A stretch of 64,000 bases of DNA from positions 124,001-188,000 of the forward strand of contig NIVC01001838.1 of the NCBI GenBank assembly GCA_002269645.1. The letters run 5' to 3'. The notes beneath the pieces were generated by a model. The model did not search any database, was not told the origin of the DNA, and saw only the letters and a list, made by a program, of their open reading frames with translations. The stretch is from Macrostomum lignano. Its lineage: Eukaryota. Each line of letters starts with the position of its first letter. The first letter of the stretch is position 1. This document shows positions 19,564 through 44,727 of the stretch, one piece after another. A program made the position numbers and the translations under genes.

Positions 19564-19976
19564 CCATCAGAGCATAGCGGTACCGGCACTACTTATCTAG
19601 TACTCTTTGCTCTTCAAATGTGTGGCTGCGAAATCTGTTTGTTGTTGAAATTTCTCAATTTCTGGTCGAACAGACCACAGAGCGCTTGAATCAAGTGATT
19701 TACATTTAATTAGGTTTAATTAGCGCTTCTTCAGCTGCGCTCAGTGCATTCTTGGCTGGATTCCGCATATTCTCTTATCAAAGCCTGTTCAGCTCGAGCA
19801 GGTGCTGCCGTCTCGCTGATTTTGCTTCACTAATTTTATTCTGCTTTGCGCAATTAGCAAAGGCTTTTGCAAGTCTGCGTCTTTTGTCTGCTCTGGCTTT
19901 TTAAATTCTTGTCTGCTGCTAACTGATGTGATTGCGAAATCTGTAGCCCCCGAAGTACTGTCATGGTACATTAATT

Positions 19977-20785
19977 ATCGAGTACCTGAATGATCTGAGT
20001 ACCTGAATTATCTGAGTACCTGAATGATCTGAGTACCTGAAGGATCTGAGTACCTGAATTATCTGAGTACCTGAAGGATCTAAGTATCTGAATTATCTGA
20101 GTACCTGAAGGATCTGAGTACCTGAAGGATCTAAGTACCTGAATGATCTGAGTACCTGAATGATCTGATTGCCTGAATGATCTGATTGCCTGAATGATCT
20201 GAATACCTGAATGATCTGAGTGCCTGAATGATCTGAGTGCCTGAATGATCTGATTGCCTGAATGATCTGAGTGCCTGAATGATCTGAGTACCTGAATTAT
20301 CTGAGTACCTGAAGGATCTGAGTATCTGAATTATCTGAGTACCTGAAGGATCTGAATACCTGAAAGATCTGAGTACCTGAATGATCTGAGTACCTGAATT
20401 ATCTGAGTACCTGAAGGATCTGAGTATCTGAATTATCTGAGTACCTGAAGGATCTGAATACCTGAATGATCTGAGTACCTGTATCTGAGTACCTGAAGGA
20501 TCTGAGTATCTGAATTATCTGAGTACCTGAAGGATCTGAATACCTGAAAGATCTGAGTACCTGAATTATCTGAGTATCTGAATTATCTGAGTACCTGAAG
20601 GATCTGAGTATCTGAATTATCTGAGTACCTGAAGGATCTGAATACCTGAATGATCTGAGTACCTGTATCTGAGTACCTGAAGGATCTGAGTATCTGAATT
20701 ATCTGAGTACCTGAAGGATCTGAATACCTGAAAGATCTGAGTACCTGAATTATCTGAGTATCTGAATTATCTGAGTGCCTGAATG
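19977..20785. repeat. 17-bp minisatellite (~47 copies) in B55 intron 2
   Basis: Unit (G/T)ATCTGAGTACCTGAA(T/G) with variants. Confidence 0.95.
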
Positions 20786-20900
20786 ATATTGTAAATAGTA
20801 ACCAGCTGAATTACTAGTTATCATCAACCGCCCTGAGCATTATTAAGTAGCCTGGCGCAGTCTAAGTTTACTAAACTCCCCCCTCCCAACCCGCTCCCAG

Positions 20901-21216
20901 GCTGGTGCTCACCGGCTCCTACAACAACCTGTGGCGCGTGTTCGATCGCCAGTCTGGCGGCGCCGACGTCACCCTGGAGGCCAGCCGGGAGGGCGTGGCG
21001 CCCGGCAGCGACTTGAAGCCCCGCCGTGTGGTCCTGTCCGCGGCGGCCAAGGCTGCTGCAGCGCAGAGCGGCGCCGGCCAGCACGCCGAACTGCTGACAG
21101 CCGACAGCTTGGACCTGCAGAAGAAGATCCTGCACCTGGCCTGTCATCCAAAGCATAACTGCGTTGCCCTGGCAGCCACTAACAACCTCTATTTGGTTGT
21201 GTCGCCGCACAATTAA
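20901..21216 (+). CDS. PPP2R2: PP2A B55, exon 3 (terminal)
   Basis: CTCCCAG| acceptor; LVLTGSYNNLWRVFDR...DSLDLQKKILHLACHPKHNCVALAATNNLYL; TAA at 21214-21216. Spliced total is 1419 nt = 472 aa. Confidence 0.95.
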
Positions 21217-21830: not shown

Positions 21831-22639
21831 CCCTGAACTCGCCACAATTTTGCAAGCTACCCTCTTATCTTACTTCTAGTACTAACTACAATACATGTTT
21901 TTTACGTAGGTGTGCACGCGGCAATATTCATTGCGTCTAGCTATCGCAGCAGTATTCTGTGCGCTCGCGATGAACTTCGATCGATCCATCCAATGCTGTT
22001 TCGAGTGCACTAAATGACCCCAAGATTTGTGTTAAGTTGGCTCGTTCTTCTCGTCTCCACGAAGGAAGCAAGGCTCAAAGTTCCATTGTTCCCTGGCCGC
22101 TAAATATTGAATAATATGCTCGAGTTTTATTTTCCCATCATCTAATTTATTTGGTCATTCTGTGTACGCATAAGTTTGCCCTATTTTCTACACACGCAAG
22201 TTGTAATACGTCTCTCTTGCGCACGCAGTCAGTAGTATGCTGTGCGCATTATTGTTGTTCATTTTCTGCATCTTGTTATTATTGTACAGTGCATATTGCA
22301 TTGTACTTCGGCAGTTTGTTTACTATATATTGTAATTGTACTGTGTTTAATGAATAAAAATAATACAGAAACCATAATGTGTCCGCGTGCTCTACTAGAA
22401 TAATTGCTATTATTCTAAAACTTTATTTTTCCAATACAGTACGCAGGCCCGTGTGCAATGCCGACCAAGCGCTGTGCCAGTCAAGCCGCCTCTGTTCTCC
22501 CCATAGTGATTCCTAACTTACTTGCTTTTTTAACTGCGCCCACAGACATTGGGGCCGTCTTACACAAGCCCTAATTAGTTTGTTCTCTTGTGTTGCATGT
22601 GAAATTCTGTTTTATAATTTCACTTTTGAATAGAAGCTA

Positions 22640-22912
22640 TCCTCCCAGATCCTCAGGTTGAGCAGCAGCCACCCTCCCAGATCCTCAGGTTGAGCAGCAG
22701 CCACCCTCCCAGATCCTCAGGTTAAGCAGCAGCCACCCTCCCAGATCCTCAGGTTGAGCAGCAGCCACCCTCCCAGATCCTCAGGTTGAGCAGCAGCCAC
22801 CCTCCCAGATCCTCAGGTTAAGCAGCAGCCACCCTCCCAGATCCTCAGGTTGAGCAGCAGCCACCCTCCCAGATCCTCAGGTTGAGCAGCAGCCACCCTC
22901 CCAGATCCTCAT
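22640..22912. repeat. 32-bp minisatellite (~8.5 copies)
   Basis: Unit CCCTCCCAGATCCTCAGGTTGAGCAGCAGCCA. Confidence 0.95.
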
Positions 22913-23431
22913 GTAAAGCTGCAGTCACTTCCAGATTTTATGGGACTTCAGTTCAATTAGAAACGATCATCGATTGCCAATAATACATATGATTCAATCT
23001 CATGAAACACAAGGTGCAAACATTTTATTGTATGCTAGGTATCGACTCCTTCAGTTTAATTGTGTCATTCAGCTACTCACCTTTTGCAAATTTAAATAGG
23101 TATTAGCGTCTATTTTATTAATCACACTTAGTTAAATTAAACAAGTTTGCTTTGTTCAAATTTTTTGCATAAAAAGGCGCCAATTTGAGTGTTTGAACTG
23201 CCGCAGTTTCGCAATCGTTGATTCTTATTTTTTCTTACGTATATTTTAGCTCAAATAGGAACATTAAGCATAGTCCTGTCTGCTTTGTACAAGCTTATAA
23301 GCTGTTTTTGCAGCTTCCTTTACTGTTTGTTTTGCGACTTGTGGTGCCCCACATTGCTCCTCCGATCATTGTCTGTTGATCATTAATCGCACAGGTTTGT
23401 AGATGCTTGACTGCCTGGGCACTGCCTGTTG

Positions 23432-23980
23432 AGATGTTTACCTTCCCCACCCATCCTTCAGGGAGATTTTTACCTTCCCCACCCATCCTTTACGGAGATG
23501 TTTACCTTCCCCACCCATCCTTCAGGCAGATGTTTACCTTCCCCACCCATCCTTCAGGCAGATGTTTACCTTCCCCACCCATCCTTCAGGGAGATCTTTA
23601 CCTTCCCCACCCATCCTTCAGGCAGATTTTTACCTTCCCCACCCATCCTTCAGGGAGATCTTTACCTTCCCCACCCATCCTTCAGGCAGATTTTTACCTT
23701 CCCCACCCATCCTTCAGGGAGATCTTTACCTTCCCCACCCATCCTTCAGGGAGATTTTTACCTTCCCCACCCATCCTTCAGGCAGATTTTTACCTTCCCC
23801 ACCCATCCTTCAGGCAGATGTTTACCTTCCCCACCCATCCTTCAGGGAGATCTTTACCTTCCCCACCCATCCTTCAGGGAGATTTTTACCTTCCCCACTC
23901 ATCCTTCAGGGAGATCTTTACCTTCCCCACCCATCCTTCAGGGAGATTTTTACCTTCCCCACTCATCCTTCAGGGAGATA
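23432..23980. repeat. 32-bp minisatellite (~17 copies)
   Basis: Unit TTACCTTCCCCACCCATCCTTCAGGGAGATTT with variants. It explains the overlapping periodic ORFs. Confidence 0.95.
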
Positions 23981-24638
23981 CTTGCCTTGCCCATCGAGCC
24001 TTTAGGGAAAATATTTCCAAAGAGATGTATAATTGAATTTTTGCCACTATGGTGAAATAGATACAGATGACGTACAAAAACGAACGCCAAGTTGTTGTTC
24101 GCGGTGGGCTATCTCGCCTTCATTTTGTATGTAGTTTAATTATGTATTTTGCTTCACCTGTTCCCCGCCTGCGCACCAATATCCTGTGCCGTGCGGTGCA
24201 AATTGGCTCACACCAAAGCTGTGCGCAGATGTGCCCCAACATTGCACCGAGTGACCTTCCTACGTTGTCTGTGTTCCAGCAGCCGGATTTTTGCTATCCC
24301 GAATTGTCTCACTGTCTATTCTATTCTAGTGAAGATTATAACAATTTGGAATGGACAATATTTGCTCTATTGTATCCTGTGTGCTTTATGTGTCTTGCTT
24401 TAACTACTTTTGTCTCCTCTGTCCGCCCAAAAGTCACTTACGCTTCTAAGAACATTGAAAATAAAGCACAAAAATCTATCTTGGCAATATTATTATATAC
24501 CCGTATTGTTATTTATATAGGCTAATTATCGTAGCGTTAATTTTTCTTATTGAAAATTTTCTTGGTTGCACCAGGATTTCAATTGCAAACAGGAGCGATT
24601 CTTTTGTGTTATTATTCATCTTTGCGAAGCATGCTTGG

Positions 24639-26589: not shown

Positions 26590-27000
26590 AACGCATAGCA
26601 CTGAATGGGGTTTCGTCATAGAGAAAAATCCAGTTTCTCCTAAGCATTCTACATGCACTGGCGATGCGACAAAAATGCGTTCTTAACGGCCCTCCGGCTC
26701 ATTTCTAGGAAAGTCGAGTGTAGCTTCCTCGCACTGCAGTTGTCTATGCCATCAAAGATACTGAAGTAGTCTGCTTTGAGTGCCAGTTGTTTTTTCACGT
26801 TTTTGAAAATTCGTTTACAATCTTTAGATCTACCAAAATGCTTCATCCATTCGTAGAATCCAACTCAAATTCGCGCCTTTCACGTTTCGCGTTTTAATAA
26901 TATCCCCAGAAGTACTCAGTAACTCGTAAGCTTTGCCTTTACCAACCTTAACATAGTAAAGCTAGTTCAAACTGCATTTTACCTGCTATTTGGCGGAAGG
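26590..27000 (-). pseudogene. Possible degraded Polinton/adintovirus-type DNA polymerase B C-terminal fragment
   Basis: Across frameshifts: GKMQFE ... KAYEL ... NVKGANL ... KLHSTFLEMSRRAVKNAFLSHRQ. The motif order is reminiscent of pPolB; similarity judged only by eye. Confidence 0.3.
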
Positions 27001-27144
27001 TGTCCAGAACCTGTTTTAAACAAATGCTCAGACGATAAGTTCACTCGGGTCCTAACAAACATGAACCAGTCATAAAAATGCACTAAAGGGTCAACAGGAT
27101 GCCACAAGATGCCAGTGCAACAGCAGGGCAGGTGCAAACGTCAG

Positions 27145-28584
27145 TCAATTTTGTACAGGCAGCTTTTTCCCGGAAGACGGAGACTGGAAAAAGTCGGTGA
27201 TGGGGCGCCGCATTTTCTTCCCAGACTCGGCCGGAGATGCGGCGGAGGCTGAGGAGCCGCGAGCCCGCTTGGCCGATCCCGGGCGCTTGCGTCCAGCCTC
27301 ATCAGGTGTCGGAGGCTGGCTGGGTGGCGGGTCACAGTCGACTGGCAGAGCCTCGTGGCAGCAGAAGGCCGCCTCCTCGGCGATCTCCGCGAGCTCGGCA
27401 AAGCTGATGCCGAACAAAATCGGCTTCAGCCGCTGCACTTTTCTCTGCTGGCTCTCCTCGAACGCGCGCTGCCTCAGCTGCTGCCGCTTCTTCCTGGTTT
27501 CAGCATCCTCAGCCTCATCCTCAGCTTCCGCAGGGTTCTCGCCTTCGTCATCGCTCAGGTAGCCGTGGGGGACAACAAAGGCAGCCTCATCCTCGTCATC
27601 ATCATCCGACCCAGCCTCCTCTGGATCTCCCTCGGACCTGTCCAGATCCTCGCCCTCGCCCTCCTCCTCCCACTCGGCCTCGCTGTCAACATCGTAGTCC
27701 AGGGTGGCCGCGTCTCTGCTCAGCGGGTTCCGGCCGGAGATGGCGCTGCTCCGCCTGCCCCAGGTGCCAAAGTAGGCGGGCCTGTGGTTCTCGCAGAACT
27801 GCAACAGCTTGCACTTGCGCAGCGACTGCGTCTCCGTCACCATGACAACGTCGGGATCGGAGCCGCCTTGCAGGAACTCGCTAAGTGGCCAGGTCTGAGG
27901 GCAGCTGCGACCCCGGCGATGCTTCAGCTCAGTGAGGTAGGACTCAGCCTGCGGCGCTGCATCGCTGCTCAAAAACTGCTCAAGAGTATTTCTCTCCGAC
28001 TCAGTCAGCGGCTCCCTGCGAATCGCCGGGCACAGCCGGGCGTCTCGGCGCAGCGGAAACGGCATGAAGCGCCGCTTCTCCTCCGGCGCTGCCGCCTCCT
28101 CAGTCTGAATCGAACCCCCGACCTCCGACTGGGCTCCGCTGGAGGCTGCCGGCTTCTTGATGAAGAAGCTGGCCAGAAGACTCGCCTGCTTCTCCTTCTG
28201 CCTGCGCTCTTCTTCCTGCCTCTTTTGCTTCTCGTCCTCCTTGGCCTTCCTTTCCTCCTCTTTCGCCTTTCTCTCCTCCTCCTTGGCCTCCTTCAGCTTG
28301 GCTTTCTCTTCTTCTTTCGCTTTCCTCTCCTCCTCCTTGGCTTCTTTCAGCTTGGCCCGCTCCTCCTCTTTGGCCTTTTTCTCTTCCTCCTTCGCCTGTC
28401 GCTCCTCTTCCTTCTTGCGCAGCTCCTCCTCCTTCTTCAGCCGCTTCTCCTCCTCTCGCTTCTGCCGCTCCGCCTCCTTCGCCAGCCTCTCCGCCTCTTT
28501 TTGCAGCCGCTTGCGCTCGCGCTCCGCCCGCCTGGCGGCCTGCTCGAGCTCCCGCTGCTGCTTGCTGGTGTTGTGCGGACTGGC
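27145..28584 (-). CDS. CHAF1A: Chromatin assembly factor 1 subunit A (CAF-1 p150/Cac1), single large exon
   Basis: Open frame of 480 codons from acceptor TTCCAG|GCC at 28584 to TGA at 27145. It holds a K/E/R coiled coil (ERERKRLQKEAERLAKE...), PIP-like ASLLASFF, then KLLQFCENHRPAYFGTW, GRNPL, LDYDVDSEAEWEEEGEGEDL and FVVPHGYLSDDEG (CAF1A/ED domain). The supplied ORF covers only the last 306 aa. Confidence 0.93.
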   Translation of the reverse strand, partial: ASPHNTSKQQRELEQAARRAERERKRLQKEAERLAKEAERQKREEEKRLKKEEELRKKEEERQAKEEEKKAKEEERAKLKEAKEEERKAKEEEKAKLKEAKEEERKAKEEERKAKEDEKQKRQEEERRQKEKQASLLASFFIKKPAASSGAQSEVGGSIQTEEAAAPEEKRRFMPFPLRRDARLCPAIRREPLTESERNTLEQFLSSDAAPQAESYLTELKHRRGRSCPQTWPLSEFLQGGSDPDVVMVTETQSLRKCKLLQFCENHRPAYFGTWGRRSSAISGRNPLSRDAATLDYDVDSEAEWEEEGEGEDLDRSEGDPEEAGSDDDDEDEAAFVVPHGYLSDDEGENPAEAEDEAEDAETRKKRQQLRQRAFEESQQRKVQRLKPILFGISFAELAEIAEEAAFCCHEALPVDCDPPPSQPPTPDEAGRKRPGSAKRARGSSASAASPAESGKKMRRPITDFFQSPSSGKKLPVQN

Positions 28585-30848
28585 CTGGAAGGCAATCGGA
28601 CATGCATATATGGGAGTTGGTTGTATGGATAGGCATCAATTAAGTGCTAAAAGTGAGCAAAAATATGAAATCCAGAATTGAGTTTCCTTTGCAATACAGC
28701 AATTTTTCATTTTATCTAAGAATTCAAGCATTTATTGCAATACATTCTACTATTGAATTTCAGACAGAACTGAAAAGTAAATTCAGACTAGTCATTTCAC
28801 AATGCAAATTTATGGACATGGAGTCTGGAGAGCAGTGCTGCCACTTGCTGCAGAAATTTGCCCACCCAGGATGCAGAAATTGTGAAATATATTTCATTTT
28901 CAGCAAAACCTGTAGAAATTTTAGCCATGTCAAATATGCATTAATTTTTGTTTCACAGCTCAACTTAATATTTGTTAGATTTACAGCACCAGTATGTTTT
29001 AATTATTCTGCTGTTTATTTAGCTTTGGCAAATAAATAAAAAGGAAAGGAAACATTTCTTTTTTGTTTCTTGTGCTTTTTTGCAGCTTAAAAATTTCTTG
29101 GCCTTGCAATAGCCATTCTGTCTTCTTCAGAAGATAAATAATCAAATAGATATAATCATTTTGTTGCATAAAATTGCTGTTGTACACATTTTTATAGACA
29201 CAAGGGAATACAGATCACAGATTACTTTTTTTACATGTTTGTGTATTATTACAGGTATATTTATATTCAGATTTATATTTGTATTACATTTAATTATACT
29301 TTTATTCTTTACCTGGCTTATGGCTATGTAGCTATTCTAATTTTATAAGTTTGGCCTACAATAATTTTGTTTTTGCTTTTTTCCAGACCAAGAAGTACTT
29401 TTTCTCTATTTGTTTTGTTTTCTTAAGATGAAATATAAATGACTATACCCAATTCGCATAATCATCATATATAACTTATAATTATATATAACATCCAATT
29501 TGTCAGTATGAGGTTTACAATGCATAGAAAGATGTCTGCCTACTTAAAAATTATTAGTATATAACTCATCTTTACTGTAACATGCATTCAATTTGTGACA
29601 TAAAAAATGTACATTCTACCTTTTCAATGTAAAATGTAATGGCTCTAGTATTTTTTACCATTTCTAAAAAAGTTTGCCCTTAGACAAAGAAGAAAAATCT
29701 GAAATAGGTTAATTTTTTATTTGTAATTTTCTGCAAACCTATAATGAAAAAGGCCCCAAAATGACCCAAAATTTGTTTAAAAAGTAAGTTGCATATCTAG
29801 TGTAAATCACATGTATGACTTGCAAAGCCACAATTAACAATGTTTTGCCTAGAATGACTAGAAAGAAGCATTGATAGCAAGCATATTAATGAATGGCTGC
29901 AGTGGCATCCTGATGACCTAATGCAAGCCTAGTGTATTGCATACAAGAAGTCTATACAGCTTGGATCTAGTGGGTTCAGTATAATAATAGCTTTTGAGCA
30001 TAGCAATATGTTCTAGCACATGTTTCCAAACAAGAAGATAGCATCTAGCTTTCAGTCCAAGTGCACTGTTGCATTCTTGTAAATAAATAAGAATGATATT
30101 GATTGTCCAAGGCTCCTAACTGAGCCAAAACCAAGAAAACAAGTATCGCCCTCTGGCGCGCACTAGGTCTATTTATAGACTTATCAAAAATGGGGTGGCA
30201 CAAAGAAAAGTCCACTGTCACATGCATAAAGACTTATCTCATCAACAATGCAATTTCTCCTGATGTTCAAAATGGCTTAATCTAGGACCTCAACTTGAGT
30301 TATATTGTTTTTTCCCTGTCTGTTGATAAATCTAATGATCATGCTCCTAAGTTCTTTGAAATCACTTTGACTTTCTTTTCTATAAAGCAGAAGAAGCTTA
30401 TGGTACTTTCAATAAAAAGCATTGAGCTAATCATTGGCAAAGCTAAGACAATGGTGGATTTAGGGGGAAGGCACACAGGGTGCACCCTGCCCCCATAGTT
30501 TGAATTTTACCTTAATATAATCTACATCCCCCATCCAAAATTTTCTGACTTTGTACTTGAGCTAAGTAGAGATAGACCTCAGACCAGTTGCAGCAGTGCT
30601 CAATATGTGCAATTTTAGTTTGCAACTAGCAATCTACGCCCCCCGTTGGGGAGCCAAATAAATGCTATACACGTTTTTTAATAAGCTAGATGTATCCTTG
30701 AAATCTTAAAAAATCTCCTGTCAAACCTTGTAAGCCTTGACATGTCAGTAATTCCCCCCCCCCAGCTTTAACATATCAACTTCCCCCCCTTGACATCTCA
30801 GCAATGCCCCCAATAAGCCTTGGAAATCTAAAAATATCTGTCAACCTT

Positions 30849-30899
30849 CTAACCCTAACCCTAACCCTAACCCTAACCCTAACCCTAACCTAACCCTAA
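30849..30899. repeat. Interstitial telomere-type (CCCTAA)n, ~8 units
   Basis: CTAACC hexamers embedded in a duplicated block with GCCTTGACATCTCAGCAATT repeats (30700-31400). A degenerate second copy lies at about 31226-31275. Confidence 0.85.
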
Positions 30900-31663
30900 A
30901 GCATTGAAATTTCAGTAATTCTCTCTAAGACGACTAAGAGTCATTATAGCACTACTACAGCATTATAGCGATAAGCTTCTTTTATTCTTTATATAACGCT
31001 TTTTTTATCAGTGATCCCTCGCCTGAGGAGGCATCAAATAATGTAATAAAAAGTTTTCAATAAACTACATGTAGCTTCTGACTTTAGCCTTGAAATCTCA
31101 TTTATACCCCCGTGAGCCTTGACATCTCAGCTATTCCCCCCCGTAAGCCTTGACATGTCAGCGATGGCCCCCATAAACCTTGAAATCTAAAAAATCCACT
31201 GTTAACCTTGAAACCCGATAAAATATAACCCTCAACCTACACCTGACCTAAACCTAACTTTAACCCAACCTAAAGCCTTGAAATCTCAGCAATTCTTCTC
31301 CCTAAGCCTTGACATTTTAGTGATTCCTTCTTTAAGAATCACAGCACTATAACGATTTCCACCAAGCTTTGACATCGTAGCAATTCCTAAATGAATCTTT
31401 TAACTTCGACATGACTTTTCTTTTATGTATACATAGTGCTACTTTTATTTTTTACATGACTCTTCTTCTATCAGCACCCCCCCATGGCGAGCTAACAAAG
31501 AATGCAATAAAAAATTGAGTAAAGTACATGAACTTTGAAGTAGCTTCTGACTTTTGCTTTGAGATCCCAGAAACAACCCCCCCCCTTGTAATCTCAGTTA
31601 TTCTCTGAGAGCCTTTACGTCTCAGTTTTTCTCCCCAGCACAGCATTATAGCTGCATTTCATT

Positions 31664-33985
31664 TTTACATGACACCCTTCATGTCTGACATGACGCTTCT
31701 TTTGATTTTTACATTACACTTCTTTTATTCTTCCATGACACTTCTTCTTTTTTTAAATGACGCTTTCATTAGGTTTTAAATGAGGCTTCTATGATTTTTT
31801 CATGACGCTTCTATGATTGTTTACATGACGCTTCTATGCTTTTTACATGACGCTTCTATGATTGTTTACATGACGCTTCTATGATTATTTCATGACGCTT
31901 CTATGATTTTTACATGACGCTTCTATGATTGTTTACATGACGCTTCTACGATTTCCGCAGGACGCTTCTATGATTTTTACATGATGCTTCTATGATTTTT
32001 TCATGACGCTCCTATGATTTTTTCATGACGCTTCTATGATATTTTACATGATGCTTCTAAGATTTTTTACATGACGCTTCTGTGATTGTTTACATGACGC
32101 TTCTATGCTTTTTACATGACGCTTCCATGATTTTTTACATGACACTTCTATGATTTTTTGCATGACGCTTCTATGATTGTTTACATGACGCTTCTATGAT
32201 TTTTTACATGACGCTTCTATGATTTTTTACATGACGCTTCTATGATTTTTTACATGACGCTTCTATGATATTTTCATGACGCTTCCACGATTTTTTAATG
32301 ATGCTTCTATGATTTTTACATGTTGCTTCTATGCTTGTTTACATGATGCTTCTACGATTTCTGCAGGACGCTTCTATGATTTTTACATGATGCTTCTATG
32401 ATTTTTTCATGACGCTCCTATGATTTTTTCATGACGCTTCTATGATTTTTACATGACGCTTCCATGATTTTTTACTTGACGCTTCCATGATTTTTTACAT
32501 GACACTTCTATGATTTTTACATGACACTTCCATGATTTTTTTTCATGACGCTTTCATGATTTTTTACATGATGCTTCTATGATTTTTTACATGACGCTTC
32601 TATGATTTTTTCATGACGCTCCTATGTTTTTTTCATGACGCTTCTATGATTTTTTCATGACACTTCTATGATTTTTTACATGACGCTACTATGATTTTTA
32701 CATGACGCTTCCATGATTTTTACATGACGCTTCTATGATTTTTACATGACGCTTCCATGATTTTTTTTCATGACGCTTCCATGATTTTTTACATGACGCT
32801 TCCATGTTTTTTACATGACACTTCTATGATTTTTGCAGGACGCTTTTATGATTTTTACATGACGCTTCTATGATTTTTTTTCATGACGCTTCCATGATTT
32901 TTACATGACACTTCTATGATTTTTTGCAGGACGCTTCTATGATTTTTTACATGACGCTTTTATGATTTTTTACATGACGCTTCTATGATATTTTCATGAC
33001 GCTTCCACGAATTTTTACATGACGCTTCTATGATTTTTACATGACGCTTCTATGCTTGTTTACATGATGCTTCTACGATTTCTGCAGGATGCTTCTATGA
33101 TTTTTATATGACGCTTCCATGATTTTTACATGACGCTTCCATGATTTTTTACATGACACTTCTATGATTTTTTGCAGGACACTTCTATGATTTTTTACAT
33201 GACGCTTCCATGATTTTTTACATGACACTTCTATGATTTTTTGCATGACGCTTCCATGATTTTTACATGACGCTTCCATGATTTTTACATGACGCTTCCA
33301 TGATTTTTTACATGACACTTCTATGATTTTTTGCAAGACGCTTCTATGATTTTTTACATGACGCTTTTATGATTGTTTACATGACACTCCTATGATTTTT
33401 ACATGACGCTTCCATGATTTTTACATGACGCTTCCATGATTTTTTACATGACACTTCTATGATTTTTTGCAGGACGCTTCTATGATTTTTTGCATGACGC
33501 TTCCATGATTTTTACATGACGCTTCCATGATTTTTACATGACGCTTCCATGATTTTTTACATGACACTTCTATGATTTTTTGCAAGACGCTTCTATGATT
33601 TTTTACATGACGCTTCTATGATTGTTTACATGACAATCCTATGATTTTTACATGACGCTTCCATGATATTTTCATGACGCTTCCACGATTTTTTAATGAC
33701 GCTTCTATGATTTTTACATGTTGCTTCTATGCTTGTTTACATGATGCTTCTACGATTTCTGCAGGACGCTTCTATGATTTTTACATGATGCTTCTATGAT
33801 TTTTTCATGACGCTCCTATGATTTTTTCATGACGCTTCTATGATTTTTACATGACGCTTCCATGATTTTTTACATGACACTTCTATGATTTTTACATGAC
33901 ACTTCCATGATTTTTTTTATGACGCTTCCATGATTTTTTACATGATGCTTCTATGATTTTTTACATGACGCTTTTATGATTTTTT
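31664..33985. repeat. ~22-bp minisatellite (~100 copies)
   Basis: Unit TTTTTACATGACGCTTCTATGA with T-run length variation and point variants. Confidence 0.95.
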
Positions 33986-34024
33986 AGTTTTCTTCTTGGT
34001 GTTAAAAAGCTTTAATTAAAAAAA

Positions 34025-34097
34025 TTCCACTCTCAAAAAATTCGAACCATCGTCTCTGCATTTAGCAGTCAGTCTGTTTACCTCTAGGCTAGCTCTC
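34025..34097 (-). mobile_element. Degenerate tRNA-like head (SINE relic or tRNA pseudogene)
   Basis: Minus strand has A-box-like TAGCCTAGAGG and B-box GGTTCGAATT at tRNA-like spacing. No intact cloverleaf. Confidence 0.45.
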
Positions 34098-34224
34098 ATC
34101 GTTTTGATAATATGAATTTTAGCACTTATAATTATAAGTTTCAAAACTCCAAGTATAGAGTAAATGACATGAGGCAGTTATGACATAATCAATTTCTCAG
34201 TCAGTCAGTATCAGTTAACAATAT

Positions 34225-34982
34225 GGTTACGCAATTTAAATCAAGTCTGGTGCTATGCTTCCACACTGCATTTTCAATACTATGACGCAATTCAAGTTGG
34301 AGTTACAATTTAGTTATGATGCAATCTATTTCAGAATCAGAATTCAACCAGTCAGTTTTTTCTCTAGCATTCTTACAATGCATTTCAAGTCGAAAAGTTT
34401 GCTTGACCTTTGCAAAAAAGCATGTTTTTCGAATATTTAATCCCTTAAACATGGAGCAATTTCTTAGCCAAGATGCATGTACTGTCACAGGAAAATTTCT
34501 GATCAAACAGTGCAAGTCTCATGAAAATCGGTTAAGCCATTTTTTCTCTAATCGATTACAAGCAAGCAAGCAAGATTTTCATTTTTAGTATATAGGAAGG
34601 ACTAGCAGGGGTAGGCTGTCTGCCAGCATCCAGAATTTTTATTATACCCCCCTCCCTTAATTGGTTACGCAAGTTAAATAGAGTAATTATCTGGGCAGTG
34701 GGGCGGAGTGAGTTTTCTTATCAGTTGGCTCTGGCGCAATCATTAAGATTGGCAGTGAAGTTTCTCGTTGATAGAATTTTGCATTGAAAAAGCCCATTTA
34801 AAACAGTTTTTCGAATATTTAATCCCCTTAGCATTGAGCTAGAGCCTAATAAAATTACATGTACCGTCCCGGGCACATTTGACATGTTTTGGCGAAGAAA
34901 CGGAGAAAATCGGTTGAGCCGTTCGGGAGATAATCGATTGCATACAAGCAAGCAAGATTTTCATTTTTAGTATATTAGAAGA
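34225..34982 (-). mobile_element. Two tandem short Helitron-like elements (~34225-34600 and 34602-34982)
   Basis: Both start (minus strand) with ...TATACTAAAAATGAAAATCTTGCTTGCTTG and share GGTTACGCAA, TTTTCGAATATTTAATCCC and GAAAATCGGTT blocks. The second ends with a GC-rich stretch plus CTAG|T at 34602. Confidence 0.65.
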
Positions 34983-35856: not shown

Positions 35857-36543
35857 TAGAAAAGCTGTTAAAACCCGCGGATTTTGAGCCCGGGGAATTC
35901 CAATCCCTGGAACTATTTTTGCATATATTAAGATTAAACTCAAACAAAAACATTTGGGATAGAGTTAAACATAAAATAGAGTACATTTGTGTAAAATTAG
36001 GATTTGAGGCAAACATTGATATTGTTGGCTGGGGTGCTGCGCAGAATGTCAGGAAAACTCTGGCCTCTACCTCTGCCTCTCCCTATGTCCCTTGCATCCT
36101 TTGAAACTTCTATCTTCTCTTCTGTTTTCTCACTTCTCTTTTGTCTCTTGTCTCTTTTCTCTCCTCTCATCTCTTCTTTCTTCTCTCCTCTGTCCCCTCT
36201 TCTTTTGTCTCTTCCCTCAATTTGTTTCTCTCTCCTTTCCTCTCTTCTCTCGTCTCTGCTCTCTCATCTCTCCTTTCTCCTATTTTATCTCTTCTTATTT
36301 CTCTCTGCTCTTTCCTCTCTCTTCTCTCTCTGCTTTCTCTTCCCTCTCCTATCTTCTCTTCTCACTCATTACATTACCCTCTCTCAACACTTCCCTCATC
36401 TCTCCTCTCTCCTTTCTCTTCTCTTCTCTCCACTCTCTCCTCTCATCTCTTCTATCGTCTCTTTCCTCACCTCTTTTCTCTCTCATCATTGCTCTCTTAT
36501 CTTTCCTTTCTCTTCTTTTATCTTTTCTCTCGTATCTCTTCTC

Positions 36544-36617
<74 letters not shown>

Positions 36618-37069
36618 TCTCCTGTCTTATCTCTCTTCTCCCCTCTTTCCTCTCCTCTCTCGTCCTTCCCCTCTTTCCTGTGTCTTCTCGATTCTCTCCC
36701 TCCCCTCCTCTCTCCTCACTCGCTTCTCTCTCCCTTTGTCTCACCTCTCATCTCTCATCTCTTATTTCTTATCTCTCCTCTTTTCTGTCATCTATCATCT
36801 TTACTCTCTTATACTCGTATGCTCTTTCACCTCTCTCCTGTGTATTCTTCTCTTTCCCCTCTTCTGACTCCCCTCTTTCCTTACTCCTCTCTTCTCTTCC
36901 CTCTTCTTTACTCTCTCCACTCTATTCTCTTCTCTTGTCTCTCTGCACTCTGCTCTCTCCTCCTTCATCTCTCATCTCTCCTTTTCTCTCTCTTATCTCT
37001 ACAATCTAATTTCTTTCCTCTCTCCTCCTCTTCCCTTGACTCTATCTCTCCTTTCTCCTCTTCTTTCTC

Positions 37070-37139
<70 letters not shown>

Positions 37140-38613
37140 TTTATCTCCTCTCCTCGATCCTTTCTAATCTCTCCTCTCGATCCTCTCCTCTCCTTTCTCA
37201 TCAATCCTGTCTTATCTCTCCCATCTTCTCTCTCCCTCTTCTCACCTCTACTCTTTCCTCTCTCTCCTCTCTCCCCTCCTCTCGCTTTTTCCTCGCATAT
37301 TCTCTGCTCTCTCCTCACCCCCTCGTATCTCTTGTTATCTTCTATTATTTCTCTTATTCCCCTCTCACCCCTTCTCTCTTTCTAATAGTCTATTCCTTCT
37401 CCTTTCCACTCTCATCTGGCCGGCAGCCATGAGCTGGATTCTTTATCTGACCTTTGAGGTAAAAATCTGCCGATCCTGCTTCGAAAGCCAGTTTTTGGGA
37501 CGTAGTTGTTATCATTTCTCATGCTTTTCTCAAAGTCATCTTTCTGGCCAATTAGTAGCCCTGAGAGCAATCTCCAGCTCCACAAACACCACCACAGTCT
37601 GCAGCAGTCTAACAACCAAGGACATACGCATTTCTTAGAAGCCATTTAAATTCGAAAATACCTTATGCGAAACTTAATGTAAAAAGTTCCATGGTGTAAC
37701 TAATTTAGTAGGATTGTATCGTAATAAGTTATTTATTAATTTTTTGCTATTTTTATAAATACAAACCATCCTGCCTTGGTTTGCCGCTGCTGCAGACTTG
37801 TCCATACAGAGGGCAATGGTTAGAATCTCTCACTAAACTGTCATGGCTAAACGTAGCCTCTCCACGCGCAGGATGCAAAGAAGGCTATTAAAAAGTTATT
37901 CCAAAACACTGTACATTTGCTATATACATTCAGCCCTATCGCCTGACCCTTCATCTGGGCTGGGGAATGAATGAGTGAGTGGCACTAACAACAGAAAAAG
38001 CAGACAAACTTCACATGCTTATAGTTTCTTTTTTGGTTGAGTTACAGAGTTGAAACTTTACATTTAGATAGAGAATGAATCAATGAAGAATTGTGTCAAG
38101 TTTAAAGTCAATTGCTTCACATGGAGCAAACTTATGGCAGCTGAAAGTTAGTCAATCTTGAAACACATTTTACACATCTGGGCCTAGATCGGGATTGAGA
38201 AAGAGAGGCAGGCAGGCGGCAGTGGTTGGGGTGGTTGCTACGCTGAAAAAAAGCAGCCTAACTTTAAAAGTGCACAGCGCCATTCAGGATTCACTTTGAG
38301 ACTTGAAATTTTACACGATTGTGCCAAAATAGTTGAAGATCATGTGTGTCAAATTTGAAGAGAATCAGTAGAAGTGGAGCAGCACTATGGAGGATTTAGT
38401 AAAAAAATCGCGCATTTTCAGCAGTTTTTTGCACTTTTAGGTAGGAAGACTCAAATTTAGGAAATTTAAAGGTAGCCTAAGACATTCTCTGTAGTGAGTT
38501 TAAGGTGGGTGTAAAGTTTGGTGTCATTTGGTTGAGCAGTTTGGGAGTCCATAGCAAACAAAATTGTCCAGACACACAGACATACAGAGTTTTGATTTTT
38601 ATATGTAGAGATT
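35856..38613 (-). mobile_element. Non-autonomous Helitron-like composite element, copy B (inverted relative to copy A)
   Basis: Reverse complement is colinear with 8762-11516. The 5' end is A|TCTCTACATATAAAAATC. The 3' end is CCCCGGGCTCAAAATCCGCGGG...CTAG|T at 35856. Contains (CT)n runs at ~36547-36616 and ~37075-37135. Confidence 0.7.
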
Positions 38614-42377: not shown

Positions 42378-44336
42378 TAAACATTGAAATAGTTTTTTTA
42401 ATTAAATCATCAATTTTGATTAATAATAATATAACAATATAATCCTAAAATTTCAAAATATAATCCATCCAATACAATTTTACTATTTGCTATGATTATA
42501 ATTTGAAACCAATAAAGCTCTTATAGTTTTGTCTTATAATTATCTACATATATACACATAATTTCACTATTTAAATAATCACATTGCAAAAGCAAATATA
42601 AACTATGTTCCTAAAAGACACTACAATATAGTTATAGTATATATAGATTTCAAAATTGTAGAATGTAGGTCATCATTGATAAAAAACAAAATTGCTAGAT
42701 ACATTTTCTTGACTTAAAATGGTTAGCATAAATGTCCTTTAGGGTTACTAACATTATGTTAAATTAGTTAAATTTATTGTTATATGGTTTAGATAATCAT
42801 TTTATTGTGTTAAGAGGCCTTCACAAATTATATAAGGCAGAAGGGCCAACAAAACCTACTGCCCTAGTTATACATGTGCATTAGTCGGCTGAGTTGGCCA
42901 ATCCAGCCAACTGATTTGGTGGCCAACCAAGGTAAGTCGCAAAAATGCCCACCCAAATAAATACCCAAGTAGTACTAAGTAGATAATAAGGCATTTTGCC
43001 ATGATAAAAAAATCATATTTACTCCTGCTATTTACCCAAAGTTGCTTTAATTTTGCTTTAGGGTTTCTTTCACATATAAGTTGCATTTTTGGCCAAAAAC
43101 TACGTTGCATTTTTTGTTAAAACTAAGTCACATGGCTAACCCAATTTTGAAGGTTGCGCATGTATTGCCCTAGCCCAAGATACTAGAAGGTATTGCCAAC
43201 TCTTTGGATATTGAAGAGTTATCACTATTGACTAGGCCAATAGCAGGGGTCACTTGCCAATATTGCCAGTGCTAGGGTCTGTGTCCAATGGCTTTCTGGT
43301 AGAAGTCCTCTTCATTGACCCCCTTGAGCACTTTAGTGCACTCCCTGAATATCTATTCAATATAGCTAAATGAGTTGCTGACAGCACAAGCTGGCATATC
43401 AGCCTTGAGCATAGGGGGATACTGCAAGGCCACTGTGTGCTGAGTCTCAGGCACTGCAAACAGAATTCTCCATTTAACCCCCCTCCTACAACAGTGACAC
43501 AGTGACAGGCAAACTGTTACTTGACTGCTATCTTAATTGCTACCTTATGGGCTATCAACTTTTGATATCCTTAGATGCTATGGCCTGTCAATTCAGTCTT
43601 TAAACAATACTAAAAGCTGATATCTTTAATTGCAAGCATGCAAAAGAATAATATAATTGTATACTATATAGCATGCATTTGTATATGTTTAAAGAACAAA
43701 AGTATTAACATTGAAACTGTGCATAGCATTGAGGAGTTTTAGTAGTAGAGTACAGAGTAGTGGTATTTCATGTAGTCATTTTTTGTATATTTGAGAACAT
43801 GATTCTGACATGTCATGAGAAAATAGACAGTTGTCTAGTAAAGGTACCCACACTAATGCAAAATGCTATTTGCAAAGTAAATGCTCAGAAGAAAAATGGT
43901 CTAACTTTAATAATTTTCCTGCACAAAGTAAAATGGTTAAATACAAGAAGAGACAATTCCTCATTTGTAATATTGTTTCATTAGATGAGTAATTTATTAT
44001 AGTGATCTTTGGTTACAAATTTGGCAATCCACCATCTAAGGGTCTAAGAAAGGGTAAAAAAACAATGAAATTTATTTGAGAATTGGAAAGGTCCAAAACC
44101 CTTGTCTACAATGGTATTATAATGAAACAAGCTTTTCTAACCTTCATTTTATAATTATCACAAACTAAAGGCTAAAGGTATCAAAATATGAACCAATGTA
44201 TAATTTATATGCAATAAATTTTGTAGTCTCACATCATTTCTACTGGCAACTTGAGGTTGTACAAAATCAAAGTTTTTTTAGATTAAATAGGATTAGGATA
44301 CTGTCGCTACACTGCTTTCAGCCAGTTGAAAGTGCG

Positions 44337-44727
44337 ATGGAATCGGCCATGGATGTAGACGATGCAGCTGCCACATTCAATGCCGAGGTTTCGCTGACTG
44401 CGCCAGCTCAGCAGCCGTCAGTGCCAGCCAGCGAGCTGCCCTGGATTGAAAAGTACAGGCCGACCCGCCTAGCCGAAATAGTTGGCAATGAGGACACGGT
44501 TGAACGGCTGGCCGTGTTTGCCAAGCAGGGCAACCTGCCCAATGTGATCCTGTGCGGCCCGCCGGGCATCGGCAAGACCACCAGCATTCTCTGTCTGGCC
44601 AGGGAGCAGCTGGGAGAGGCCTGCAAGGAGGCTGTGCTGGAATTAAACGCCTCTAATGATCGCGGTATTGAAGTTGTACGCGGTAAAATTAAAATGTTCG
44701 CCCAACGTCGGGTCACCCTGCCGCAGG
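44337..44727 (+). CDS. RFC2: Replication factor C subunit 2 (RFC40), exon 1
   Basis: [21 protein letters not shown], Walker [33 protein letters not shown]; donor G|GTGAG at 44728. Confidence 0.95.

What the first reader, a model, noticed from the sequence alone, without database searches (positions are those of the whole stretch)
28065..28630. CHAF1A exon has no start codon of its own: candidate for spliced-leader-donated AUG
Seen: a clean acceptor (GATTGCCTTCCAG|) at 28585 is followed in phase 0 by GCC AGT CCG. There is an in-frame TGA 14 codons upstream and no in-frame ATG for the first 173 codons, which encode the whole KER domain. I found no upstream coding exon in 15 kb of repeat relics. 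Known: flatworm spliced leaders end in AUG, and this AUG can serve as the initiator Met. Inference: SL trans-splicing would give AUG-GCC (M-A-S-P-H..., 480 aa), so a core chromatin gene would depend on trans-splicing for its start codon.
Basis: partly seen in the sequence, partly recalled or inferred. Interest (0 to 1): 0.75.

Follow-up and report, generated by a model that had tools for sequence, protein, structure and literature searches.

The report
Flatworm CAF-1 gene borrows its start codon
This copy of the chromatin-assembly gene CHAF1A in the flatworm Macrostomum lignano has no start codon of its own and almost certainly gets one from the AUG at the end of the trans-spliced leader; that trick has been known in flatworms since 2006, and two sister copies of the gene carry a genomic ATG at exactly the same codon.

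Summary
On the minus strand, a TTCCAG acceptor (AG at 28586-28585) opens a single coding exon (28584-27145, 479 codons). An in-frame TGA lies upstream: 18 codons, not 14. The first in-frame ATG is codon 174.

The window is Macrostomum lignano scaffold NIVC01001838.1. This species has a 35-nt spliced leader ending in ATG, and 30-39% of its genes are trans-spliced at [T/C]TNCAG acceptors.

I could not reach read-level data. Four indirect lines support SL donation of the AUG:
- GenBank models of all five gene copies are 5'-partial. One begins exactly after the CAG, as gene 2 of a transcriptional unit that the annotators cut at SL-read peaks.
- Trematode CAF1A proteins also begin just before the same RAERER motif, so no N-terminal domain is missing.
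- No conserved upstream exon exists.
- Two paralogues read TTCATG|GCC where this copy reads TTCCAG|GCC. They encode MASPHN… (480 aa), exactly as predicted.

Both gene types show purifying selection.

The mechanism is already known (Cheng et al. 2006, with many cases in Schistosoma and Echinococcus). This is therefore a new member of a known kind, and only this copy depends on the SL. The ATG/acceptor swap between paralogues is the one modestly new point. Interest 0.3.

The parts
28585..28602 (-). 3' splice (trans-splice) acceptor: pyrimidine-rich tract plus TTCCAG, with the AG at 28586-28585
   Evidence: Sequence read. It matches the M. lignano trans-splice acceptor motif [T/C]TNCAG (PMC8629364). 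It is identical in the three group-A copies and is replaced by TTCATG in the two group-B copies.
28636..28638 (-). In-frame TGA, 18 codons upstream of the exon start, which closes the frame in the outron
   Evidence: Conserved in all five copies.
27145..28584 (-). Single coding exon of CHAF1A (CAF-1 p150): 479 codons plus a TGA stop at 27147-27145
   Evidence: Translation. Pfam PF11600 and PF12253. 99% identical to M. lignano PAA75377.1 and PAA75395.1. Among the five copies there are 19 synonymous and 10 non-synonymous differences and no indel.
28066..28584 (-). First 173 codons, with no ATG, GTG or TTG in frame. They encode the N-terminal RAERER motif, the KER domain and a PIP-like box.
   Evidence: Seven synonymous to one non-synonymous difference in codons 1-140 among copies. 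Aligns to the N-terminal KER region of trematode CAF1A.
28162..28188 (-). PIP2-like motif QASLLASFF (exon residues 133-141), upstream of the first ATG
   Evidence: Aligns with KQRAVLLGFL in trematodes and KAEITRFF in vertebrates. It has one residue more than the canonical Qxx[LIM]xx[FY][FY].
28063..28065 (-). First in-frame ATG (exon codon 174), an internal Met and not a start
   Evidence: It aligns to the conserved internal F-[M/A]-P-F position of CAF1A orthologues.
28585..28832 (-). The 248 nt upstream of the exon (proximal outron) that is shared with the group-B paralogues. Homology stops at 28832.
   Evidence: blastn and alignment. 19 variable sites in 248 nt, against 29 in 1440 nt of the CDS.
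26999..27144 (-). 146-nt 3' flank (probable 3' UTR) shared with the group-B paralogues, marking the end of the 1834-bp duplicated unit
   Evidence: No poly(A) tract at the boundary.
27187..27201 (-). C-terminal PIP-like motif ITDFF (within MRRPITDFFQ)
   Evidence: Aligns with the trematode and cestode C-terminal motif RKRVTL[D/E]xFF.

Best explanation
Window 28584-27145 (minus strand) is the single coding exon of one copy of M. lignano CHAF1A (CAF-1 large subunit). Its pre-mRNA carries an unpaired 3' splice site, TTCCAG|, at 28585.

Proposed mechanism:
1. The spliceosome joins the 35-nt spliced leader (…UUGCAUG) to that site.
2. The mature mRNA then reads …UUGC-AUG-GCC-AGU-CCG….
3. The leader's terminal AUG serves as the initiator for a 480-aa protein, MASPHNTSKQQ….

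This compact CAF1A starts directly at the KER domain, as trematode CAF1A does.

What is shown: the acceptor, the frame, the missing ATG, the species' AUG-terminated SL, the conserved position of the N-terminus, and the paralogous genomic ATG at the same codon.

What is inferred: that SL reads join at this site (from the annotation pipeline), and that ribosomes initiate on the SL AUG (by analogy with Schistosoma).
For: 1. Species and SL. The window is 100% identical to M. lignano NIVC01001838.1. The SL ends in ATG with a GTAAG donor. 30-39% of genes are trans-spliced, with enrichment among conserved and stem-cell genes (PMC8629364; PMC5730564).

2. Acceptor. TTCCAG fits [T/C]TNCAG. It is phase 0 with the ORF, and an in-frame TGA lies 18 codons upstream.

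3. Annotation.
- All five GenBank models are 'partial', meaning they lack a start codon.
- Mlig020088g2 starts exactly after the CAG.
- It shares its transcriptional unit with Mlig020088g1, 7.1 kb upstream.
- Such units were cut at SL-read peaks.

4. N-terminus. Trematode orthologues start 4-25 residues before the same [KR]RAERER motif. Met174 and the PIP-like box align to internal conserved positions.

5. No upstream exon. There is no homology elsewhere in the 64 kb. Only two ATG…|GTRAG phase-0 candidates occur in the 15.6 kb upstream. Neither is conserved in the sister copies.

6. Paralogues. L004 and L005 share only a 1834-bp unit with this locus. They read TTCATGGCC instead of TTCCAGGCC, giving a 480-aa ORF MASPHN….

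7. Selection. Differences private to the acceptor-type copies are 6 synonymous to 2 non-synonymous (p=0.002 to 0.025). The overall count is 19:10, for a dN/dS of about 0.15. There are no CDS indels.
Against: - I could not inspect any SL-junction read, cDNA or RACE product. Searches of the protein collection for RNA-derived fragments beginning MASPHN found nothing.
- The window's own gene model starts 15 nt downstream of the acceptor, at TSKQQ, rather than at it.
- RNA-seq was mapped with multi-mapping allowed. With copies 98% identical, the annotation cannot say which ones are expressed.
- The selection signal private to the acceptor-type copies lies in codons 154-474. No private change falls in the KER part, so translation from the very 5' end is not separately demonstrated for this copy.
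- The SL AUG has a weak -3 context (U).
Confidence: 0.8

Rival explanations
1. The acceptor is cis-spliced to a small, unannotated upstream exon that carries the ATG. On this view the group-B ATG evolved to compensate when the 1.8-kb unit was copied without that exon.
For: The CAG/ATG difference between paralogues does not by itself distinguish cis- from trans-splicing in the A copies. The 15.6 kb upstream is transcribable space. In L001 the transcriptional unit extends more than 8 kb upstream.
Against: None of the five RNA-seq-derived models has an upstream exon. Orthologue tblastn found nothing. Only two phase-0 ATG…GTRAG candidates exist. One (38784-38695) has GTG, a 7-nt deletion and GTAGG in L001 and L003. 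The other (36968-36885) is absent from L001 and L003. The trematode N-termini leave room for only a few residues.
Confidence: 0.07
2. The acceptor-type copies (this window, L001, L003) lost their start codon (ATG to CAG). They are either decaying duplicates or make only a truncated 306-aa protein from Met174. Full-length CAF1A would then come from the ATG-bearing group-B copies.
For: Two paralogues have an intact genomic ATG and complete 480- and 493-aa ORFs. Multi-mapping means the annotation of the A loci could derive from B transcripts. No private substitution in the A copies tests the KER frame.
Against: - Differences private to the A lineage are 6 synonymous to 2 non-synonymous, with no indel or stop in 1440 nt across three copies, while the flanks carry 3-4 times more changes and a 13-nt indel.
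- The double change produces exactly a consensus trans-splice acceptor in phase 0. I estimate, by my own rough calculation rather than a tool result, that chance would do this about 2 times in 10,000 given the flank divergence.
- The L001 model boundary falls exactly at CAG|, as expected from SL reads. SL reads cannot come from B copies, which lack that AG.
- Met174 is an internal conserved residue, and a protein without KER and PIP would lack core CAF-1 functions (the functional point is from my own knowledge).
Confidence: 0.08
3. Translation starts at a non-AUG codon (for example an in-frame CUG) within the exon of a trans-spliced or unspliced transcript, and the SL AUG is not used.
For: There is no in-frame ATG, GTG or TTG, but in-frame CTG codons are present. 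The SL AUG has U at -3.
Against: The SL AUG would be the first AUG, is in frame, and has G at +4. SL AUG initiation has been demonstrated in flatworms (Cheng et al. 2006, as cited in PMC9851317, and PMC3510090). The paralogous ATG marks the same codon as the start.
Confidence: 0.03

Closest known systems
Flatworm mRNAs that use the SL 3'-terminal AUG as initiator methionine (Cheng, Cohen, Ndegwa & Davis 2006, J Biol Chem 281:733; Schistosoma mansoni and S. japonicum; extended to Echinococcus granulosus in PMC3510090)
   Same: The SL ends in AUG. The acceptor is in phase 0 with the main ORF. There is no nearby alternative AUG. The conserved N-terminus requires the SL Met. In S. mansoni, 28% of trans-spliced transcripts are in frame and more than 40 cDNAs need the SL AUG. 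In E. granulosus, 143 of 187 SL clusters are full length only with the SL ATG.
   Different: This is a free-living macrostomorphan rather than a parasitic neodermatan, and this gene has not been reported. There is no experimental proof of trans-splicing or initiation here. Uniquely, paralogues in the same genome carry a genomic ATG at the same codon.
SL trans-splicing in Macrostomum lignano (Wasik 2015; Wudarski 2017, PMC5730564; Ustyantsev & Berezikov 2021, PMC8629364; Wiberg 2023, PMC10468722)
   Same: Same species, same 35-nt SL, same acceptor motif [T/C]TNCAG. It is a conserved gene linked to proliferation, the class reported as enriched among trans-spliced genes.
   Different: Those papers do not analyse use of the SL ATG as a start codon. 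[quoted passage not shown] No paper in the library mentions this gene.
slORFs: ORFs created by SL-supplied start codons (slORFfinder, PMC9851317)
   Same: The ORF exists only after the SL is added.
   Different: slORFs there are mostly new or alternative ORFs found by ribosome profiling in nematodes, Oikopleura and trypanosomes. Here the SL completes the canonical conserved ORF.
Trematode CAF1A (e.g. Paragonimus P0012, Calicophoron P0005, Fasciola P0018, Opisthorchis P0045)
   Same: They lack the long N-terminal domain of vertebrate and insect p150 and start 4-25 residues before the RAERER/KER region. They share the PIP2-like box, the dimerisation domain and the C-terminal …TL[D/E]xFF motif.
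   Different: They have their own genomic ATG and a roughly 300-aa C-terminal block (…PYLIHLVH…FEFRVFW…) that the M. lignano protein lacks.

Membership tests
Flatworm SL-AUG-initiated trans-spliced mRNA (Cheng et al. 2006 class) | The organism has an SL RNA whose exon ends in AUG immediately before the GU donor | tested here: met
   Species identified as M. lignano. Published SL …TTGCATG followed by GTAAG (PMC8629364). No SL gene lies in the window itself.
Flatworm SL-AUG-initiated trans-spliced mRNA (Cheng et al. 2006 class) | [quoted passage not shown] | tested here: met
   TTCCAG| at 28590-28585 against [T/C]TNCAG. It is the only AG downstream of the in-frame stop.
Flatworm SL-AUG-initiated trans-spliced mRNA (Cheng et al. 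2006 class) | SL-containing transcripts joined at that acceptor | not testable with these tools
   Indirect evidence only. The paralogue's GenBank CDS begins at the base after CAG, as gene g2 of a transcriptional unit cut by the SL-read-based TBONE pipeline. No RNA-derived contigs were found.
Flatworm SL-AUG-initiated trans-spliced mRNA (Cheng et al. 2006 class) | The SL AUG is in frame with the main ORF with no intervening stop | tested here: met
   The exon starts at a codon boundary (GCC AGT CCG), with 479 open codons.
Flatworm SL-AUG-initiated trans-spliced mRNA (Cheng et al. 2006 class) | There is no alternative start near the 5' end, and the conserved N-terminus is lost without the SL Met | tested here: met
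   The first ATG, GTG or TTG is codon 174. The RAERER motif, KER and PIP-like box lie upstream of it and align to orthologues. The paralogous ATG sits at the same codon.
Flatworm SL-AUG-initiated trans-spliced mRNA (Cheng et al. 2006 class) | Ribosomes initiate on the SL AUG | not testable with these tools
   Needs ribosome profiling or reporter assays.
CAF-1 large subunit (CHAF1A / p150 / Cac1) | KER/acidic region (PF11600) and CAF1A dimerisation domain (PF12253) | tested here: met
   PF11600 E 1.5e-8 and PF12253 E 1.8e-25, both above their curated cut-offs. 458 homologues, all annotated as CAF1A.
CAF-1 large subunit (CHAF1A / p150 / Cac1) | PCNA-interacting (PIP) box after the KER domain | tested here: inconclusive
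   QASLLASFF aligns with the orthologous PIP2 position but has one extra residue relative to Qxx[LIM]xx[FY][FY].
Downstream gene of an SL-resolved operon (M. lignano criterion: repeat-adjusted intergenic distance under 1 kb) | A same-strand gene immediately upstream, within about 1 kb | tested here: not met
   No gene is annotated within 10 kb upstream in this locus or in L003. In L001 the same-unit upstream gene lies 7.1 kb away. Repeat-adjusted distance was not computed.
Processed retrocopy of a trans-spliced mRNA | SL sequence fused to the exon in genomic DNA, with a poly(A) tract at the 3' boundary | tested here: not met
   There is no SL match in the window apart from a 14-nt chance seed at 59793. 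The 248 nt of non-SL upstream sequence is shared between paralogues, and no poly(A) occurs at the unit boundary.

The most novel reading that the evidence does not exclude
Within one genome, paralogues of an essential chromatin gene are caught on both sides of an evolutionary swap. One type has a genome-encoded ATG (TTCATG|GCC). The other has a trans-splice acceptor at the identical position (TTCCAG|GCC), which outsources the start codon to the spliced leader. Both types are under purifying selection.

An AG acceptor followed by an AUG-terminated SL regenerates AUG at the same spot. A single T-to-A change (ATG to AAG) would therefore destroy the start and create its replacement at once. If so, start codons in flatworms can move between genome and SL almost neutrally. 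This could explain why the terminal AUG of flatworm SLs is so strictly conserved.
Probability: 0.45. Interest if true: 0.5.

Novelty: new member of a known kind. Interest (0 to 1): 0.3.

Why it matters
For annotation, thousands of M. lignano proteins are deposited as 'partial', as all five CHAF1A copies are. Cases like this are in fact complete once the SL Met is added, and gene finders that demand a genomic ATG will mis-model them. In this gene they would call a 306-aa fragment lacking the KER DNA-binding domain and the PIP-like box.

For biology, expression of this copy of a replication-coupled histone chaperone, a gene typical of stem cells, is coupled to trans-splicing.

The ATG/CAG paralogue pair is a ready-made natural experiment. 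M. lignano can be made transgenic, so it could be used to compare SL-AUG and genomic-AUG initiation. It also suggests a simple mutational route by which flatworm genes gain or lose dependence on the SL.

Tried and rejected
- Rfam and tRNA scans of the window found nothing.
- A search for the SL or an SL RNA gene in the window found only a 14-nt AT-rich chance match at 59793.
- I looked for RNA-derived (Logan) protein fragments starting MASPHN, hoping to fetch an SL-bearing contig. The N-terminal query returned no relevant hit. The 90% cluster holds only four NCBI models plus two unrelated 45-aa ENA entries.
- Gene IDs and 'CHAF1A' do not occur in the papers or in their held supplements. Cheng et al. 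2006 is not held in the library.
- Upstream exon by homology: none found.
- Upstream exon by ATG…GTRAG phase-0 scan: two candidates, both rejected because they are not conserved in the sister copies.
- Conservation between close duplicates (L001, L003) as an exon footprint was uninformative. Their flanks are 91-99% identical throughout.
- Retrocopy origin of the 1.8-kb unit was rejected. It has no SL and no poly(A), and outron sequence is included.
- The operon hypothesis fails by the published distance criterion.
- The ATG-free stretch as a statistical anomaly was rejected (P about 0.27).
Full report
**1. What is in the sequence**

The feature is on the minus strand. Reading 5'→3', the sequence is …TGA TGC CTA TCC ATA CAA CCA ACT CCC ATA TAT GCA TGT CCG ATT GCC TTC CAG | GCC AGT CCG CAC AAC ACC AGC AAG….

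- The AG of the acceptor is at 28586-28585, and the exon starts at 28584.
- The frame stays open for 479 codons, to the TGA at 27147-27145.
- The upstream in-frame TGA is at 28638-28636.
- No ATG, GTG or TTG occurs in frame before the ATG at 28065, which is codon 174.
- The CAG is the only AG between the in-frame stop and the exon.
- Pfam finds CAF1A_acidic and CAF1A_dimeriz above their curated thresholds.

The ATG-free stretch is not itself improbable. The region has 5% T, and 27% of shuffles have no in-frame ATG. The case rests on the combination of features, not on that statistic.

**2. Whose genome this is**

The exon product is 99% identical to four Macrostomum lignano GenBank proteins. 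The window is 100% identical over 21.4 kb to Mlig_3_7 scaffold NIVC01001838.1.

M. lignano has a single 35-nt spliced leader, CGGTCTCTTACTGCGAAGACTCAATTTATTGCATG, followed in the SL RNA gene by a GTAAG donor. Between 30% and 39% of its genes are trans-spliced. The top motif at trans-splice acceptors is [T/C]TNCAG. Trans-spliced genes are enriched for conserved and stem-cell genes (PMC8629364; PMC5730564).

Our acceptor, TTCCAG, fits that motif.

**3. Indirect RNA evidence from the annotation**

The Mlig_3_7 gene models were built from RNA-seq. SL-containing reads were trimmed and mapped, and the TBONE pipeline cut transcriptional units into genes at the SL-read peaks.

- All five CHAF1A models are deposited as 'partial', meaning the ORF runs to the 5' end of the transcript without a start codon.
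- In paralogue L001 (NIVC01000887.1) the CDS begins at the first base after the CAG.
- That gene is BOX15_Mlig020088g2. The gene 7.1 kb upstream on the same strand is BOX15_Mlig020088g1.
- The two were therefore parts of one transcriptional unit that the pipeline cut at this acceptor. This is what an SL-read peak produces.

The other four models, including the window's own (P0121), start 15 nt further in, at TSKQQ. I attribute this to ragged 5' ends of assembled transcripts. That attribution is inference.

I could not see any reads. A search for RNA-derived protein fragments starting MASPHN returned nothing.

**4. Is an N-terminal part missing?**

It is not. BLASTP and an alignment show that trematode CAF1A proteins (Paragonimus, Clonorchis, Opisthorchis, Calicophoron, Fasciola, Heterobilharzia) begin only 4-25 residues before the motif [KR]RAERER.R..KE. 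In M. lignano that motif starts at exon residue 18.

Met174 aligns to an internal, conserved F-[M/A]-P-F position. The PIP2-like box (KQASLLASFF against KQRAVLLGFL and KAEITRFF) lies upstream of it. The protein must therefore start at or very near the exon's first codon.

A tblastn of 119 homologues hit nothing outside the exon in the 64 kb. The 15.6 kb upstream consists of:
- a 22-23-nt satellite of 102 copies,
- TC-rich low-complexity sequence,
- a short telomere-like array,
- ORFs with no Pfam domain.

Only two ATG…|GTRAG phase-0 mini-exon candidates exist there. One is disrupted in the sister copies, where it has GTG, a 7-nt deletion and GTAGG. The other is absent from them.

**5. The paralogues give the most telling result**

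The assembly holds five copies.

- Group A: the window (L002), L003 and L001. These have PRP19 downstream.
- Group B: L004 (NIVC01000888.1) and L005 (NIVC01001326.1). These sit in an unrelated neighbourhood, with a divergent MAP65-like gene upstream and ATP-synt_F6 and an EXOSC10-like gene downstream.

A and B share only a sharply bounded 1834-bp unit. It comprises 248 nt upstream of the exon, the exon, and 146 nt of 3' flank, at 98% identity. The boundaries carry no SL and no poly(A).

At the acceptor, all A copies read GCCTTCCAG|GCCAGTCC and both B copies read GCCTTCATG GCCAGTCC. Two adjacent fixed differences turn the acceptor's CA into AT. This places a genomic ATG on exactly the codon where the SL AUG would land.

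L004 accordingly has a complete 480-aa ORF, MASPHNTSKQQ…. L005 has the same ATG plus a further in-frame ATG 13 codons upstream.

**6. Are both types functional?**

| Region | Length | Variable sites among the five copies |
|---|---|---|
| 5' flank | 248 nt | 19 |
| CDS | 1440 nt | 29 (19 synonymous, 10 non-synonymous), no indel |
| 3' flank | 146 nt | 8 substitutions plus a 13-nt indel |

With 22% synonymous sites, the 19:10 split gives p = 7e-7 and a dN/dS of about 0.15.

| Subset | Synonymous : non-synonymous | p |
|---|---|---|
| Private to A copies | 6:2 | 0.002 (0.025 with a generous 35% synonymous expectation) |
| Private to B copies | 13:4 | 3e-6 |
| KER codons 1-140 | 7:1 | 1.7e-4 |

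Both types therefore look selected as coding genes.

One limitation remains. The A-private changes all lie at codon 154 or later, and both of those that lie before Met174 (codons 154 and 159) are non-synonymous. Selection on the KER frame specifically in the A copies is thus not shown.

**7. Interpretation**

The best explanation (confidence 0.8) is that this copy is SL trans-spliced at 28585 and uses the SL's AUG as initiator.

The rivals are:
- a hidden cis exon (0.07),
- a start-less or truncated duplicate whose role is covered by the B copies (0.08),
- non-AUG initiation (0.03).

The CAG/ATG contrast does not by itself separate the cis from the trans option. The annotation boundary, the acceptor motif and the absence of any conserved upstream exon do that work.

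The claim that 'a core chromatin gene depends on trans-splicing' needs narrowing. This copy and its two near-duplicates depend on it. The genome also holds two copies with their own ATG.

**8. Relation to what is known**

Use of the flatworm SL's 3'-terminal AUG as initiator Met was shown by Cheng et al. (2006, J Biol Chem 281:733). I know that paper only through citations.
- In E. granulosus, 143 of 187 SL clusters are full length only with the SL ATG, and use of the SL AUG is conserved across Neodermata (PMC3510090).
- All reported flatworm SLs end in ATG (PMC12582326).
- For Macrostomum, the ATG is noted as the likely start codon (PMC10468722).

The mechanism is therefore established, and this is a new instance of it. 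No paper in the library mentions this gene.

The modest new element is the within-genome ATG↔acceptor interchange. I add one inference: xAG| plus an AUG-ending SL restores AUG at the same place. A single ATG→AAG change could therefore swap the source of the start codon without losing it.

**9. Verdict**

- Observation: confirmed, with minor coordinate corrections.
- Interpretation: supported by indirect but convergent evidence.
- Novelty: new member of a known kind.
- Interest: 0.3.

Noticed in passing
L004 9980-9990 and L005 9980-9990 (paralogues); window 28585-28587: The two group-B paralogues have a genomic ATG (TTCATGGCC) exactly where the window has the CAG acceptor. A and B share only a 1834-bp unit that sits in unrelated neighbourhoods.
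   Followed up: yes
L005 9944-9946: An A-to-G change 40 nt upstream creates an extra in-frame ATG in L005, extending its ORF to 493 aa (MQPTPIYACPIAFMASPHN…). The gene model was nevertheless deposited as 5'-partial from TSKQQ.
   Followed up: partly
window 30849-30899: Interstitial telomere-like repeat, (CTAACC) x 8.7, which is TTAGGG on the other strand.
   Followed up: no
window 31688-33986: A 22-23-nt satellite (ACATGACGCTTCTATGATTTTT) of about 102 copies. Together with its flanks (about 30625-34982) it is an insertion relative to paralogous loci L001 and L003.
   Followed up: partly
window 36158-37316: About 1.1 kb of TC/GA low-complexity sequence. It produces long spurious ORFs on both strands and is absent from L001 and L003.
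   Followed up: no
window 44300-44340 (+ strand): The replication factor C small-subunit gene (AAA/Rad17 P-loop hits) is preceded by CTGCTTTCAG|CCAGTT…. This is a consensus-like trans-splice acceptor, with exon start 44322, in phase 0 with the ORF. The gene's own ATG (44337) lies 5 codons downstream, so an SL AUG would also be in frame here but is not required.
   Followed up: partly
window 27145-27400 and alignment: M. lignano CAF1A lacks the roughly 300-aa C-terminal block (…PYLIHLVH…FEFRVFW…) present in trematode, cestode, insect and vertebrate orthologues. It keeps the terminal PIP-like motif (RRPITDFF, aligning with RKRVTLDxFF). It is an unusually compact CAF1A.
   Followed up: partly
L001 1841-2857: A Myb_DNA-bind_4 gene (Mlig020088g1, one 96-nt intron) lies 7.1 kb upstream of the L001 CHAF1A copy, in the same annotated transcriptional unit. 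It has no counterpart in the window and may be a transposon-associated insertion.
   Followed up: partly
window 19966-20787, 22626-22936, 23431-24008: Several tandem-repeat arrays between CHAF1A and the convergent PRP19-like gene (which ends near 21216) showed up as staggered self-matches in blastn.
   Followed up: no
cluster of P0001: Two unrelated 45-aa ENA proteins (MNHTVVTVLPKV…) are listed as members of the CHAF1A 90% cluster. This is probably a clustering artefact.
   Followed up: no
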